Below are positions 33,400 through 38,011 of a stretch of 56,782 nucleotides of DNA, in pieces. The DNA comes from Octopus bimaculoides (lineage: Eukaryota). The notes below the pieces were generated by a model that saw only the letters and a program-made list of their open reading frames with translations, was not told the DNA's origin and did not search any database. The stretch's first letter is position 1. Every line of letters starts with the position of its first letter. The position numbers were made by a program, and so were the translations under genes. The stretch is from the NCBI RefSeq assembly GCF_001194135.2, contig NC_068985.1, positions 126,102,519 through 126,159,300 on the forward strand, written 5' to 3'.

Positions 33400-33718
33400 A
33401 AAAAGCACCTTCTCTCCTTCGGTTATGAATGACCACGGGGTTGCACCTAAAATGTTCCCCTCCTAGAAGATCAGCAGTCACCCATGCATACCATCCTCCC
33501 CACTTCATGCCACCGATGTTATCCAAGGGAAAGGCAAAGGGGCCGATACAGCTTGGCACCTGTGATGTTGCAACTCATTTCTACAGCTGAGTGAACAGGA
33601 GCAACATGAATTAAAGTGTCTTGCTCAAGAACACAACACACAGCTTGGTCTGAGAATGGAACTCACTGCCACATGATTTTGAGCCCGACGCTCTAACCAC
33701 TGAGCCATGTGACTGCAT
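33400..33718 (-). mobile_element. tRNA-derived SINE, family D
   Basis: Reverse complement TGGCTCAGTGGTTAGAGCG (A box), CTTGAGCAAGACACTTTA, CACTCAGCTGTAGAAATGAG; homologous to 51984-52300. Confidence 0.85.
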
Positions 33719-33759
33719 TAACTTGTGAGTAGGTGAAAAAAAGTAGATGAAAAAAATTC

Positions 33760-35125: not shown

Positions 35126-35549
35126 AGAATGTTATTTTCTCAGACAAGTCATCCTTTACCTTATTTCCGACCACTGGCTGAGTATATGTGTGGAGACAGC
35201 CAAAGGAAGTATTTGACCCAGACTGCCTTCTTCCAACTGTTAAACATGGAGGAGGATCAGTGATGATCTGTGGGTTGGGGGGGGGCTATCTTGAAAATCC
35301 GCCGGCCCAATGGTTTCTCTTCATGGCAGAATTAATAGTCAAGACTATTTAAGCATTTTATCTGATCAAATTCATCCTATGGTTGCGGAACTATTTCTGG
35401 AGGGAAATGCAATCTTTCAGGATGATAATGCACCAATTCACACGGCTAAAGTTGTTACTGAATGAGCACGAGGAACATTCTAGTGAAGTCGAACATCTTA
35501 TCTGGCCCCCACAGTACCCAGATCTCAATATTATTGAACATTTATGGTG
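35126..35549 (+). mobile_element. Tc1-family transposase catalytic fragment with DD36E spacing
   Basis: VIFSDKSSF..LPTVKHGGGSVMI..FQDDNAPIHTAK..WPPQYPDLNIIEHLW; 36 residues between the second D and E after removing a 1-nt insertion. Confidence 0.88.
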
Positions 35550-35605
35550 CATTATTTACATTATTTACATTTGACGGATATTTGTCCTCATCTTGTTTGT
35601 TGTTA

Positions 35606-35649
35606 ACACAACGTTTCGGCTGATATACCCTCCATCCTTCAACAGGTGT
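35606..35649 (-). ncRNA. Minimal type I hammerhead ribozyme motif (inverted pLTR copy, CUGUUGA core)
   Basis: ACAC-CUGUUGA-A-GGAUG(GAGGGUAUAU)CAGCC-GAAA-CGU-U-GUGU. Confidence 0.7.
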
Positions 35650-36130
35650 CTTGAGGAAATTTCGAATCTAGGCTCTCATATGACATCGGGACAGTATTCA
35701 AGAGTAATACAAGACTTCGCAAATATCTCCGAGTAAATCCACCAATAGAAGAGAATATGACTAAAGACTGCTTGTACTTAATCCCATGCAGATGTGATAG
35801 GTTATACAAAGGCGAAACATGCCGCCCTCTAAAAATAAGGGTAGACGAACATCGCAAAGCTGTGACATGAGGAGATATTGATAAATCAGGTATAGCTGAT
35901 CATGTATGGAAAAATGGAGATGACTTTCCCTTGTGGGATGAAGTTAAAATAATAGACAGAGAACACCAGTGGAAAATACGAAAAATAAAAGAAACAGCAC
36001 ATATGCTAGGACACAACAACCTCCTAAGCAGACCGAGTGCAGATATGAATAGCATATGGGAACCAGTATTAAGGAAGGATAGGAAAATATTAGATTTATA
36101 AGCCCTAAAATTCACTCCATAATTGCCCAC

Positions 36131-36185
36131 GGGCATATAGCGTAGTAAAGAGTGCGGGCTACTAACTCTAGGTTCGAAATTTCCC
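36131..36185 (+). promoter_or_regulatory. Shortened tRNA-like (Pol III A/B-box-like) cassette upstream of the hammerhead
   Basis: GGGCATATAGCGTAGTAAAGAGTGCGGGCTACTAAC..GGTTCGAAAT; homologous to the fuller copy at 49965-50037 at the same element position. Confidence 0.6.
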
Positions 36186-36189
36186 CAAG

Positions 36190-36233
36190 GCACCTGATGA
36201 AGGCTGGAGGGTATATCATCCGAAACGCTGTGT
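36190..36233 (+). ncRNA. Minimal type I hammerhead ribozyme motif (canonical CUGAUGA core; U16.1 mutated in this copy)
   Basis: GCAC-CUGAUGA-A-GGCUG(GAGGGUAUAU)CAUCC-GAAA-CGC-U-GUGU. Confidence 0.8.
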
Positions 36234-37833
36234 TAACAACAAACAAGATGAGGACAAATATCCGTCAAATGTAAATAATGTAAATAATGTGCATAATTCC
36301 TCATCTCTTGAATATAGAACTGTATTATCTAATCGGTACGACATTAGACTTCAACGGAGACATATAGAGAAACTCCATCAAAAACTAGCTCGTCTTTCCA
36401 ACCATCTAACTTTCCTGTGTAGATGTAGAGACTCAAAGCTAATATCACCTGGCTTGAATGTAATGACACCAGTGGATTCATATAAAGGTAGAAAAGAAGC
36501 GAAAAGGGCAGAACATACTTTCGTCCGTAAGAGGATGCATTACAACCGTTGGAAAAAAACATCAACTAAATAACGAAATCAAACAGAGGTTATCTTCATT
36601 ACTTAGGAGAATAACCAGAGATGATGATAGAAAGAGAATCTAACAAGATCTAGAAAGGTCGTTCAAGAAAGAATTTGAAATGGTGAATACATGCCAGATT
36701 AAGAAGTTTATGAAACTCAAAGATCAGAGAATGGAGACTGAAGTCCGTCACCTACCTCAGAAGGCAGTAATTAATGTAAGTAGCCGACATCAAGAAAGCT
36801 CTGAAGAAGCAGTACTAAACAAAATTCTCAACTTTGCGACAACCATCAAGAGCATTCCATACTTGGACATAATAGCCCCTATTGAAGAGATAGCCATAAA
36901 GATACCAAAAGCACAGGAAGATGAACTAAGGTGGAAAATGAGACAGTTACTAGGAAAAGCGAAACTTCCCAAACCAAACATCACTAAAGAAGAAAAGTTC
37001 GCTATCAAAACACTACAGAGTGGCAATTCCATCATAATACTTCCAGCGGACAAGGAAAATGCTACAGTGGTGATGAACAAGTCTGACTATTCTGAAAATT
37101 TGGCAAGTCTTATAAATGCTGATAGCTACAGCAAAGAAAAGAAAGACCCAACTCTCAAAACAGAGAGGAAGTTGTCACAGATCTTGATCAAGAACAAGGA
37201 TCACTTTACACCAATGAAGTACAGACAACTGACTCAACACAACAGTAAACTACTACACATGTAGGTCCCCCTAAGATTCACAAGAATGGTATTCCATTAA
37301 GATCCATGGTGAGCTATAGAGGTTCAGCATGTCATCCACTGAGCCGCTTCCTTGTTGATATAATCAGTCCATTAGCAGGAAAGTTAACATCGTACGTGAA
37401 AAATTCCGCTCACTTCGCAGAATTTATCAAGGATACCCTCATTGAATCCAACTAGATGATGAGTCTAGATGTGATAAGTCTGTTCACCAATGTCCCAAAT
37501 GGTGAAGCACTATCGGTGATTCAAGAAAAACTAGTGACAGACACCCATCTAAAAGAACGCACNNNNNNNNNNATGGATTCAGGACATCATATACCGCAAG
37601 CCGACCTTCACTGGACGATACCTCAGCTTCAATTCCCACCATCCATACAGTGTAAAGAGAGGGATTACTCAGTGCCTAAAACATCGAGCAAAGAATATAA
37701 GTAGCGATCGTGATACACACCACGAAGAAATGATCAAGCTCAATAACAATCTATTAAGCAACAACTACCCCAAAAGTATATTATCCACTTCATTTATGAA
37801 GAAAAGAGAGAATAAGACCAATAAACTGTTCAC

Positions 37834-38011
37834 AGATTGCTCCTATCTGGCCAGCCCCAGATTCCTTGGAAGAAAATAGCGTATGTATTTGTGTAACATT
37901 CTTCGTTTTTTTTTTTCCGTCCTCGTTTTCGTATACATTCGCTGTTTTCTTCCAAGGAATCTAATGCTCTTAGCTTAGTTTTCCCTGGGTCTAGCCAGAT
38001 TGGAGCAATCT
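37834..38011. repeat. 178-bp foldback element with two nested inverted-repeat blocks
   Basis: AGATTGCTCC.ATCTGG..CCCAG pairs with CTGGG..CCAGATTGGAGCAATCT; AGATTCCTTGGAAGAAAATAGCG pairs with CGCTGTTTTCTTCCAAGGAATCT. Confidence 0.8.

What the first reader, a model, noticed from the sequence alone, without database searches (positions are those of the whole stretch)
35672..37830. Candidate Pol III-transcribed, hammerhead-processed, protein-coding Penelope element: tRNA head + ribozyme + TTTT-free sense strand
Seen: in both copies of this PLE family a tRNA-like A/B-box cassette sits at the same position after the GIY-YIG stop (36131, 49965). In the intact copy it lies immediately upstream of a minimal hammerhead (36190) and the ORF start of the next tandem unit. 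Reading the sense strand by hand I find no TTTT from 35360 to 37905 or from 48719 to 50155, although TTT and AAAA+ runs are common; T4 reappears within about 80 bp of the element ends. Internal controls do carry sense T4 runs: the Neptune PLE (9550-11500, many), the CR1-group LINE and the 16.6-kb RLE LINE. At roughly 22% T (a few lines counted) about 5 runs would be expected by chance. Established: type-2 Pol III promoters are tRNA A/B boxes, metazoan Pol III stops at 4 or more Ts, and PLE pLTRs carry minimal hammerheads. Inference: the autonomous RT-EN mRNA may be made by Pol III and trimmed by the ribozyme. I know of no description of this arrangement but cannot search for one.
Basis: partly seen in the sequence, partly recalled or inferred. 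Interest (0 to 1): 0.9.

Follow-up and report, generated by a model that had tools for sequence, protein, structure and literature searches.

The report
Octopus Penelope element with tRNA-derived leader
A decayed octopus Penelope-like retrotransposon carries a conserved tRNA-derived promoter-like cassette beside its hammerhead ribozyme, which appears undescribed for an autonomous element, but its lack of TTTT runs follows from codon usage and does not show RNA polymerase III makes its mRNA.

Summary
The sequence facts hold. 35360-37905 and 48719-50155 have no TTTT on the + strand. A tRNA-derived cassette follows the endonuclease stop in both copies. A minimal hammerhead lies at 36189-36234.

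The cassette is not a stray SINE. It sits at the same place in all 13 3'UTRs examined, across four families: Octopus window, O. vulgaris, O. sinensis and an unidentified ENA assembly. A conserved TTTATAAG lies about 35 nt upstream of it. Two more distant Penelope elements lack it.

The Pol III-mRNA reading is not established.
- An intact relative (L012, 806-aa ORF, 2675 bp) also has no TTTT, but a synonymous-codon shuffle expects only 0.46.
- G runs are depleted as much as T runs.
- Decayed copies do carry TTTT.
- The "intact" window copy has stops, frameshifts, a gap hiding 363 bp, and a MITE. Its own B box is deleted and its ribozyme has a C at position 16.1.
- The main reading frame stays open upstream through the ribozyme in three families, with an in-frame ATG before it. 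Ribozyme "trimming" would therefore remove the start codon.

Best reading: a Penelope pseudo-LTR with a built-in SINE-type cassette, laid out like schistosome Sm-alpha. It is a new variant of a known kind, and the polymerase is undecided.

The parts
35550..35671 (-). Inverted, 5'-truncated fragment of the element's 3' end. It contains the pre-ribozyme motif, a hammerhead with a core mutation (CTGTTGA), and the tail.
   Evidence: Inverted repeat I1 with 36168-36289: 122 nt, 94% complementary. BLAST to the HHR-tail probe. Same arrangement upstream of L001, L008A and L008B. A known Penelope hallmark (PMC8557442).
35679..36101 (+). C-terminal GIY-YIG endonuclease remnant of the upstream, 5'-truncated unit. 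It has one internal stop; the terminal TAA is at 36099-36101.
   Evidence: Translation. Homologues in O. vulgaris and O. sinensis, and one that JGI names a GIY-YIG endonuclease. tblastn. Pfam itself did not call GIY-YIG on this fragment.
36095..36102 (+). Conserved TTTATAAG (TATA-like) motif, about 35 nt upstream of the tRNA-derived head. In this family it overlaps the stop codon; in families B-D it is non-coding.
   Evidence: Invariant columns in alignment A1 across three families. Also seen in L009, L010, L011 and L012.
36131..36166 (+). tRNA-derived head, internally deleted version. The A box is at 36138-36148 (TAGCGTAGTAA, 2 mismatches). Its own B box and the microsatellite spacer are missing.
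   Evidence: D-stem 88.6% paired with compensatory changes in 3 of 4 pairs across families. No ARAGORN or Rfam call.
36171..36181 (+). It is actually a conserved motif just upstream of the ribozyme and lies inside the open reading frame (read as V-R-N-F).
   Evidence: Three matches in the window, including the inverted fragment and copy 2 after its microsatellite. Conserved in families A-C. Frame analysis.
36189..36234 (+). Minimal type-I hammerhead. Helix I 5' strand 36189-36193; CTGATGA 36194-36200; extra A 36201; helix II 36202-36206 with 36217-36221; GAA 36222-36224; ACGC (consensus ACGU) 36225-36228; U17 at 36229; predicted cut 36229|36230; helix I 3' strand 36230-36234. This copy has C at 16.1 and a C.U mismatch in helix II.
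   Evidence: Pair counts: 84% of cells paired against 17-54% in slid controls, and 7 pairs with compensatory change. Hallmarks match PMC4209133. No Rfam hit.
36235..37830 (+). Tandem downstream unit: conserved AAGATGAGGA (ATG at 36248), N-terminal domain and reverse-transcriptase remnants. The frame continuous with the ORF is open from 36172. There are several stops and frameshifts.
   Evidence: RVT_1 E = 3.8e-9 on a query that joins copy-1 and copy-2 RT pieces.
37563..37572 (.). Assembly gap. It stands for 363 bp of reverse transcriptase that copy 2 retains (48962-49324). The flanks are not contiguous.
   Evidence: blastn of copy 1 against copy 2: 37369-37562 matches 48768-48961, and 37573-37787 matches 49325-49534.
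37834..38011 (.). MITE-like insertion with 27-nt terminal inverted repeats. It ends the Penelope sequence and holds the first downstream T run (37906).
   Evidence: Inverted repeats I3 and I2. T4 positions.
48744..49941 (+). Copy 2: reverse-transcriptase and endonuclease remnants, 5'-truncated, with frameshifts and a 10-N gap at 49535-49544. Stop at 49939-49941.
49965..50040 (+). Copy 2 tRNA-derived head with near-canonical promoter boxes: A box 49970-49980 (TGGGGTAGTGG), B box 50014-50024 (AGTTCGATTCC), 33 nt apart.
   Evidence: only 5 such A+B pairs in 306 kb scanned, and 2 of them are Penelope heads. Also.
50041..50145 (+). Copy 2 (AAT/TAG)n spacer, pre-ribozyme motif (50082-50104) and 3' tail. 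The hammerhead core is deleted between 50104 and 50105.

Best explanation
WHAT IT IS (shown)
The locus is a decayed composite insertion of a canonical, C-terminal-endonuclease Penelope-like element of Octopus. It has the usual layout:
- an inverted 3' fragment;
- then a 5'-truncated unit that serves as a pseudo-LTR;
- then a tandem unit.

What is unusual is the pseudo-LTR. It holds three conserved modules in fixed order:
1. a TATA-like TTTATAAG;
2. about 35 nt later, a tRNA-derived head with A and B boxes;
3. after a variable, microsatellite-rich spacer, a minimal dimer-type hammerhead.

The element's reading frame appears to begin inside the pseudo-LTR, upstream of the ribozyme.

HOW IT MOST LIKELY WORKS (inferred)
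- The head is a SINE-type internal (type 2) Pol III promoter cassette that travels with every copy.
- It fires from pseudo-LTRs to give tRNA-leader RNAs that run through the ribozyme. This is the same promoter-then-hammerhead order as schistosome Sm-alpha elements.
- Uncleaved transcripts that keep the upstream ATG serve as mRNA. These are probably Pol II products started near the TATA-like motif.
- Dimer-dependent hammerhead cleavage of multimeric transcripts yields unit-length RNA.
- The T4-free sense strand is a by-product of T-poor, homopolymer-poor coding composition. It permits Pol III read-through but does not demonstrate it.
For: ELEMENT IDENTITY
- RT (RVT_1).
- Homologues with RVT_1, HTH_animal and GIY-YIG domains.
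- Inverted plus tandem architecture, as described for Penelope elements.

RIBOZYME
- The clade design is cac-CTGANGA-N-helix II-GAAACGTT|GTG, with the extra nucleotide after A9, a G10.1-C11.1 pair and a palindromic ACGU.
- These are the hallmarks listed in PMC4209133.
- 7 pairs show compensatory change.

CASSETTE
- Present at the same place in 13 of 13 3'UTRs from four families.
- Absent in the more distant L006 and L007.
- A+B boxes with at most 1 mismatch each and 33-nt spacing in copy 2 and L008B. Such pairs are rare in background: 5 in 306 kb scanned.
- The 5' half of the head is about as conserved as the coding sequence, and its D-stem covaries.
- TTTATAAG is invariant across families, whether it is coding or not.

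ORF START UPSTREAM OF THE RIBOZYME
- The same frame (VR..P.TP[DE]E[GS].R.Y.PKRC) is open and continuous with the main ORF in c1, L008A, L004, L011 and L005.
- In-frame ATGs lie upstream, and the ribozyme match (CTGANGA through GTTGT, as scanned) is a fixed 38 nt.

PRECEDENT
- Sm-alpha has the same promoter-then-ribozyme layout (PMC6765202).
Against: - No transcript, 5'-end or polymerase-occupancy data exist here, so every functional step is inference.
- The cloverleaf is not preserved, and neither ARAGORN nor Rfam recognises the head.
- A and B boxes are degenerate in some copies: the L005 B box is deleted and the family C A box is divergent.
- I found no clear population of short, SINE-like copies that start at the head. 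There is only one candidate, at L001:7063.
- The coding status of the pseudo-LTR segment rests on open frames. The codon-position test was only weakly suggestive: 11/7/18 differences at positions 1/2/3.
- Family D (L009) has a stop immediately before the ribozyme.
- The organism behind families B-D (ENA ERZ21867824) is unknown.
Confidence: 0.45

Rival explanations
1. Pol III starts at the tRNA-derived head of an upstream pseudo-LTR, reads through the whole T4-free RT-EN unit, and the hammerhead removes the tRNA leader to give the coding RNA.
For: - A conserved A/B-box cassette plus a TATA-like motif sits where a Penelope promoter is expected.
- There is no T4 from the head to the end of the Penelope sequence in copy 1, none in copy 2, and none in the intact L012 element of 2675 bp.
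- The clade sense strand has 10 T4+ against about 22 expected from dinucleotide shuffles, and no T5+. Control ORFs, including two outgroup Penelope elements, have ratios of 1.0-1.3.
- Family C uses TTT for none of its 17 Phe codons.
- From my own knowledge: R2 elements are a precedent for a retrotransposon RNA made by a polymerase other than Pol II and released by a ribozyme.
Against: - Zero T4 is what codon usage predicts: 0.46 expected in the L012 ORF, and 1.8 (order-2 Markov) in copy 1.
- G4 runs are depleted identically, A4 runs are also low in the intact ORF, and the fall in run extension is gradual with no step at 4.
- T4 occurs in L002 (3, two of them in coding codons), L008A (a synonymous ACC to ACT change), L001, L008B and L011.
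- The frame and the upstream ATG put the ribozyme inside the ORF, so trimming would delete the start codon.
- Most copies have an inverted upstream fragment, not a direct one.
- Copy 1 lacks its own B box and has a crippled ribozyme.
- Published opinion holds that Pol III processivity is too weak for autonomous elements (PMC10886601).
Confidence: 0.1
2. The head acts at the RNA level, not as a promoter. As a tRNA mimic in the leader or 3'UTR it could be recognised by tRNA-processing or tRNA-ligase machinery (RNase P/Z for end formation; RtcB for joining the 5'-OH and cyclic-phosphate ends that the hammerhead makes), or by the element's own reverse transcriptase.
For: - The D-stem is kept through compensatory changes in 3 of 4 pairs, with 88.6% of cells paired against 25-48% in slid controls.
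- The head sits next to a ribozyme whose products are substrates of tRNA ligase; animal retrozyme RNAs are circularised by RtcB in vitro (PMC7229834).
- Families B and D have genomic A-rich tracts after the stop codon, upstream of the head.
Against: - The acceptor, anticodon and T arms are not maintained. The anticodon-like stem is only 67.5% paired, and no tRNA model scores even at relaxed thresholds.
- RNase P and RNase Z need the acceptor/T-arm helix (my own knowledge).
- The best-conserved stretch coincides with the A box, so DNA-level and RNA-level constraints cannot be separated here.
Confidence: 0.2
3. Passenger. An ancient tRNA-SINE landed in the 3'UTR of an ancestral Penelope element and has simply been carried along without function. 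The T4-free stretch is pure composition.
For: - SINEs make up about 11.6% of the O. vulgaris genome (PMC13282606).
- Penelope elements favour microsatellites, and the spacer is microsatellite-rich.
- Large internal deletions of the head are seen in c1 and L008A. The B box is lost in L005, and the ribozyme carries G12 to A in L005 and L011.
Against: - The head is retained at the same position in all 13 UTRs of four families whose proteins are only about 60-68% identical.
- Its 5' half stays alignable while the adjacent spacer does not.
- The copies with deletions are dead copies.
- A neutral insert would not be expected to keep D-stem pairing through compensatory change.
Confidence: 0.1

Closest known systems
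Canonical EN+ Penelope-like elements (Penelope/Poseidon-type) with minimal hammerheads in their pseudo-LTRs (Cervera and de la Pena 2014; Craig et al. 2021)
   Same: - RT plus C-terminal GIY-YIG ORF.
- Partial-tandem pseudo-LTR and an adjacent inverted 5'-truncated copy.
- A 30-40 nt tail extension and association with microsatellites.
- A type-I minimal hammerhead with an extra nucleotide after A9, a G10.1-C11.1 pair and a palindromic helix III.
   Different: - A conserved tRNA-derived A/B-box head and a TATA-like motif lie between the stop codon and the ribozyme. The Penelope papers I could read do not describe this.
- The reading frame appears to run through the ribozyme.
Schistosome Sm-alpha / Sj-alpha SINE-like elements (Ferbeyre et al. 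1998; Laha et al. 2000; summarised in PMC6765202)
   Same: - A tRNA-derived Pol III promoter is followed by a hammerhead, so the promoter ends up near the 3' end of the cleaved unit.
- A tandem upstream copy is needed to transcribe the next unit.
- tRNAscan-type predictions of tRNA-Gln turn out to be Sm-alpha.
   Different: - Sm-alpha is short and non-autonomous.
- Here the same module order is part of the pseudo-LTR of the protein-coding element itself.
- Here the ribozyme is the dimer-type minimal form.
TRIMp3 elements (Cassandra, Helenus, Ajax): retrotransposons with 5S- or tRNA-derived Pol III promoters in their LTRs (Kojima 2024, PMC10886601)
   Same: - A small-RNA-gene-derived promoter sequence is embedded in the terminal repeat of a retrotransposon.
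- The tRNA-like part does not encode a functional tRNA.
- Conservation is taken as the sign of promoter function.
   Different: - Those are LTR retrotransposons, all non-autonomous.
- The author argues that their autonomous partners must use Pol II.
- They have no ribozyme.
R2 and L1Tc non-LTR elements with HDV-like ribozymes
   Same: A self-cleaving ribozyme at the 5' end releases the element RNA from a longer transcript (R2 and L1Tc carry HDV-like ribozymes; PMC6765202). That R2 rides on a Pol I rRNA transcript and that its translation is cap-independent are from my own knowledge.
   Different: - A different ribozyme class and a different element class.
- No internal Pol III-type promoter.
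- Here the ribozyme seems to lie inside the ORF rather than ahead of it.

Membership tests
Penelope-like element, C-terminal EN+ type | Reverse transcriptase of the Penelope type | tested here: met
   Pfam RVT_1 E = 3.8e-9 on the window-derived RT. 1380 homologues, most with RVT_1 plus PF26215.
Penelope-like element, C-terminal EN+ type | GIY-YIG endonuclease C-terminal to the RT | tested here: inconclusive
   Pfam did not call GIY-YIG on the decayed window fragment. The motif ...LYLIPCRCDRLYKGETCRPLKIRVDEHRK is visible. One homologue is named a GIY-YIG endonuclease by JGI, and P0097 carries PF01541.
Penelope-like element, C-terminal EN+ type | Pseudo-LTR from a partial tandem, often with an inverted 5'-truncated copy at the 5' side | tested here: met
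   Inverted arms 35550-35671 and 36168-36289. The tandem junction continues into the ORF. Same pattern in L001, L008 and L005. Description in PMC8557442.
Minimal type-I hammerhead of Penelope elements | Core CUGANGA ... GAAA, an extra nucleotide between 9 and 10.1, a G10.1-C11.1 pair, and a palindromic 15.2-16.2 | tested here: met
   All four features are present in the family consensus and in 12 of 14 aligned copies. Criteria from PMC4209133. In window copy 1 the core is present but 16.1 is C.
Minimal type-I hammerhead of Penelope elements | Helices I and II supported by compensatory change | tested here: met
   84% of cells paired against 17-54% in slid controls. 7 of 12 pairs show changes on both sides, 4 of the 5 in helix II.
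Minimal type-I hammerhead of Penelope elements | Match to a curated hammerhead covariance model | tested here: not met
   No Rfam hammerhead hit, even at E <= 10. This is expected for motifs with a 1-bp helix III (my own knowledge).
Minimal type-I hammerhead of Penelope elements | Self-cleavage, as a dimer | not testable with these tools
   Needs in vitro transcription of monomer and dimer constructs.
tRNA-derived SINE head / type 2 Pol III promoter | A box (TRGCNNAGTGG) and B box (GGTTCGANNCC) 30-60 nt apart | tested here: met
   Copy 2 (49970 and 50014) and L008B have at most 1 mismatch each and a 33-nt gap. There are only 5 such pairs in 306 kb scanned. Families B and D also have both boxes. 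Copy 1 does not: its own B box is deleted.
tRNA-derived SINE head / type 2 Pol III promoter | tRNA cloverleaf, or a recognisable tRNA match | tested here: not met
   ARAGORN found 0 genes in the window and in 5 loci. No Rfam tRNA hit. Relaxed ARAGORN thresholds gave only noise. Only the D-stem is kept.
tRNA-derived SINE head / type 2 Pol III promoter | Transcription by Pol III | not testable with these tools
   Needs occupancy, inhibitor or 5'-end data.
   Free of T4 in the window copies and in L012. Expected counts are only 0.46 (codon shuffle, L012) and 1.8-2.7 (copy 1). G runs are equally depleted, and T4 is present in other copies.
Sm-alpha-like hammerhead SINE | Short, non-autonomous unit made of a Pol III promoter plus a hammerhead | tested here: not met
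   The module order matches, but here it is part of an RT-EN element. No population of short copies was found in 153 kb of sequence held. One head-only fragment lies at L001:7063.

The most novel reading that the evidence does not exclude
The tRNA-derived cassette is the element's true promoter. Pol III starts at the head in a tandem pseudo-LTR and transcribes the whole T-run-free unit. That would make this the first autonomous, protein-coding retrotransposon whose genomic or messenger RNA is a Pol III product. Codon usage (for example, no TTT codons in family C) would then have been shaped by terminator avoidance.
Probability: 0.1. Interest if true: 0.85.

Novelty: new variant of a known kind. 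Interest (0 to 1): 0.55.

Why it matters
How Penelope elements are transcribed, and what their hammerheads are for, is largely unknown outside Drosophila virilis.

A clade whose pseudo-LTR keeps a tRNA-derived A/B-box cassette next to the ribozyme matters for three reasons:
- It gives a concrete, testable promoter candidate.
- It physically links autonomous Penelope elements to the Pol III-plus-hammerhead layout of Sm-alpha-type SINEs and retrozymes, which suggests how those non-autonomous elements arise.
- If the ORF really runs through the ribozyme, the RNA motif and the coding sequence are under joint constraint, and cleavage and translation are mutually exclusive fates of one transcript.

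It is also a caution for annotation. Such heads can be masked as SINE insertions, which splits one element into several.

Tried and rejected
- ARAGORN at default and relaxed thresholds: nothing at 100-90%. At 80-70% there were 72-447 calls in 153 kb, which is noise.
- Rfam at gathering score and at E <= 10 on the heads and ribozymes: only chance or microsatellite hits.
- Exact-pattern scan of metagenome contigs for the pre-ribozyme-plus-core motif: 0 hits.
- Ferbeyre 1998 and Lunse 2017 are not held in the library, so I cite Sm-alpha through reviews.
I therefore do not call families B-D cephalopod.
- I first scored two sense T4 runs in L005 and took them as strong counter-evidence. L012 showed that they lie in an inverted inner segment, so they are antisense, and I withdrew that point.
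- I first read a stop at 36274 in the main frame. The computed frame is open back to 36172.
- Independent SINE insertion: rejected, because the junction is shared and the head is present in all copies.
- Codon-position test for coding in the pseudo-LTR: too noisy to decide.
Full report
WHAT THE WINDOW HOLDS

The best protein matches are to Octopus vulgaris and O. sinensis.

Copy 1 is a composite.
- 35126-35545 is a Tc1/mariner transposase fragment (DDE_3).
- 35550-35671 is an inverted copy of the Penelope 3' end (122 nt, 94% complementary to 36168-36289).
- From about 35661 a 5'-truncated unit supplies the endonuclease C-terminus, with its stop at 36099-36101, and the 3'UTR.
- At about 36290 a second unit follows in tandem.
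- That second unit has stops and frameshifts.
- Its 10-N gap at 37563-37572 replaces 363 bp that copy 2 retains, so the flanks are not contiguous.
- It ends at a MITE at 37834-38011.

Copy 2 (48744-50145) is a 5'-truncated, frameshifted RT-EN-UTR copy. It is 82-91% identical to copy 1 over the long aligned blocks (88-91% in the RT).

Inverted-plus-tandem structures are the published hallmark of Penelope insertions (PMC8557442).

THE T4 OBSERVATION

It is exact. The two intervals are the longest and third-longest T4-free stretches in a window that has 403 T4+ runs.

Part of the first interval is not Penelope sense strand at all: 35360-35671 is the mariner fragment plus the inverted piece.

Expectations for copy 1 sense (2160 nt):

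| Model | Expected T4+ runs |
|---|---|
| Mononucleotide shuffle | 4.3 |
| Dinucleotide shuffle | 2.7 (P0 = 0.05) |
| Order-2 Markov | 1.8 |

I then fetched relatives: L001 (O. vulgaris), L008 (O. sinensis), and L002-L005 and L009-L012 from an unidentified ENA assembly.

- Other copies do carry sense T4. L002 has 3. L008A has 1, created by a synonymous ACC to ACT change. L001, L008B and L011 have 1 each.
- Two T4 runs that I first scored in L005 turned out to lie in an inverted inner segment, so they do not count.
- The one intact relative, L012 (806-aa ORF, element 5022-7696), has none in 2675 bp. It is only 18.9% T and uses TTC for all 17 Phe codons.
- For L012 the synonymous-codon shuffle expects 0.46 T4 in the ORF (P0 = 0.62), and the dinucleotide shuffle expects 1.5 in the whole element.
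- Pooled over the clade (14.5 kb), T4+ is 10 against about 22 expected. G4+ is also 10 against about 22. A4 and C4 are as expected. Four control ORFs, including two outgroup Penelope elements, have T4 ratios of 1.0-1.3. The pooled copies within a family are related, so these shuffle P values overstate the significance.
- Run-extension probabilities fall gradually for both T (0.23, 0.20, 0.14, 0.11, 0) and G. There is no step at length 4.

So T runs are scarce in this clade, but not specifically, and no more than its codon usage predicts. The feature permits Pol III read-through; it is not evidence for it. The total avoidance of TTT codons in family C is the one hint that remains.

THE tRNA-LIKE CASSETTE

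- ARAGORN and Rfam see nothing.
- Copy 2 nonetheless has TGGGGTAGTGG and AGTTCGATTCC 33 nt apart. Such A+B pairs occur only 5 times in 306 kb scanned, and two of the five are Penelope heads.
- In copy 1 the head is internally deleted.
- The head sits at the same place in all 13 3'UTRs I could examine, in four families whose proteins are roughly 60-68% identical.
- An invariant TTTATAAG lies about 35 nt upstream of it.
- Two more distant Penelope elements (L006; L007 from a leafhopper) keep the same ribozyme design but lack the head.
- The head's 5' half (A box and D arm) stays alignable while the spacer does not.
- The D-stem is 88.6% paired, with compensatory changes in 3 of 4 pairs. The rest of the cloverleaf is not kept.

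This is an ancestral, constrained module, not a set of independent SINE insertions.

THE RIBOZYME

The clade consensus is GACAC-CUGANGA-A-GGCUG-loop-CAGCC-GAA-ACGU-U|GUGUU. Every hallmark listed for Penelope minimal hammerheads is present (PMC4209133).

On 14 copies, 84% of pair cells are standard pairs against 17-54% in slid controls, and 7 pairs change on both sides.

Individual copies are damaged:
- Window copy 1 has C at 16.1 and a helix II mismatch.
- The inverted fragment has CTGTTGA.
- Copy 2 has lost the core.
- L005 and L011 have G12 to A.

AN UNEXPECTED POINT

The main ORF has no in-frame ATG at the unit start.

The frame continuous with it is open upstream through the ribozyme in c1, L008A, L004, L011 and L005. 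It reads ..VR..P.TP[DE]E[GS].R.Y.PKRC.NN.. In-frame ATGs lie before the ribozyme, and the ribozyme match (CTGANGA through GTTGT, as scanned) is a constant 38 nt. The other two frames are short.

A codon-position test was only weakly suggestive, and family D has a stop just before the core.

If the ORF does start in the pseudo-LTR, ribozyme cleavage removes the start codon. That contradicts a 'hammerhead-trimmed mRNA'. It suggests instead that uncleaved RNA is the message and cleaved RNA is the template.

COMPARISON WITH WHAT IS KNOWN

- The promoter-then-hammerhead order is that of schistosome Sm-alpha SINE-like elements. These are thought to be Pol III-transcribed and to need a tandem upstream copy (PMC6765202).
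- tRNA- or 5S-derived promoters in terminal repeats are known from non-autonomous LTR elements. Their describer argues that autonomous partners must use Pol II (PMC10886601).
- None of the Penelope or retrozyme papers I could search mentions a tRNA-like module or Pol III in an autonomous Penelope element.

VERDICT

- The cassette is real, conserved and apparently undescribed.
- The Pol III-mRNA inference is possible (about 0.1) but unsupported by the T4 argument.
- The ribozyme-trimming step is contradicted by the reading frame.

My sub-confidences:

| Statement | Confidence |
|---|---|
| The cassette is integral and conserved | 0.9 |
| It acts as a Pol III-type promoter in some form | about 0.5 |
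| Full-length coding RNA is made by Pol III | about 0.1 |

Noticed in passing
window 36172-36290; L008:6920-7040; L004:5100-5480 (- strand); L011:4563-4800; L005:4020-4330 (- strand): The reading frame continuous with the main Penelope ORF is open upstream through the hammerhead in three families. In-frame ATGs lie before the ribozyme, and the scanned ribozyme match is a fixed 38 nt. The ribozyme may therefore lie inside the coding sequence.
   Followed up: partly
window 36245-36254; the same motif in L002, L005, L009 and L011 tails: AAGATGAGGA is conserved in all four families about 18 nt after the predicted cleavage site. In families A and C, where the frame was computed, its ATG opens a short (8-codon) frame that is +1 relative to the main ORF.
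   Followed up: partly
L012:5001-7421: The intact 806-aa family C ORF uses TTT for 0 of 17 Phe codons. Other T- versus C-ending pairs pool to 69:125. The first in-frame ATG is about 85 codons in.
   Followed up: partly
clade sense strands (window copies plus L001-L011): G4+ runs are depleted exactly as much as T4+ runs (10 observed against about 22 expected for each), while A4 and C4 are not depleted. No explanation was tested. Avoidance of cryptic splice signals or of RT slippage are untested possibilities.
   Followed up: partly
L005:7630-7667 and L011:4669-4706: The hammerhead carries G12 to A (..GGCCAAAACG..). In the overlapping frame this is a synonymous CCG to CCA change, so the ribozyme may be lost while the coding sequence is kept.
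   Followed up: no
window 35126-35545: A Tc1/mariner transposase fragment (Pfam DDE_3, E = 1.5e-8) lies immediately left of the Penelope insertion, which apparently interrupted it.
   Followed up: yes
window 37834-38011: A MITE-like element with 27-nt terminal inverted repeats and an inner 30-nt inverted repeat. It cuts off Penelope copy 1.
   Followed up: partly
L001:6793-7300: An inverted Penelope tail fragment, then an (AAC/AAT)n microsatellite, then a head-only fragment in the opposite orientation ending in (AAT)n. This is the only candidate for a short, SINE-like derivative that I saw.
   Followed up: partly
L005:4045-7715: A near-perfect palindromic pair of Penelope copies centred at about 5880. 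Each arm has an inner segment of about 190 bp in the opposite orientation, and the gene caller fused that antisense sequence onto the ORF.
   Followed up: partly
L009:4380-4410, L010:4370-4395, L002:5580-5600: Genomically encoded A-rich tracts (up to about 35 A) directly follow the stop codon in families B and D, upstream of the TATA-like motif and the head.
   Followed up: no
window 33480-33720 (- strand): An unrelated tRNA-derived SINE whose head (..TGGCTCAGTGGTTAGAGCGTCGGGCTC..) resembles the Penelope head. Read by eye only.
   Followed up: no
L012:7697-11498 and L010:4560-7880: Other elements are inserted into the Penelope 3'UTR between the head and the ribozyme. L012 has an LTR retrotransposon with RT, RNase H and integrase. 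L010 has an insert of about 3.3 kb with a zf-CCHC ORF.
   Followed up: no
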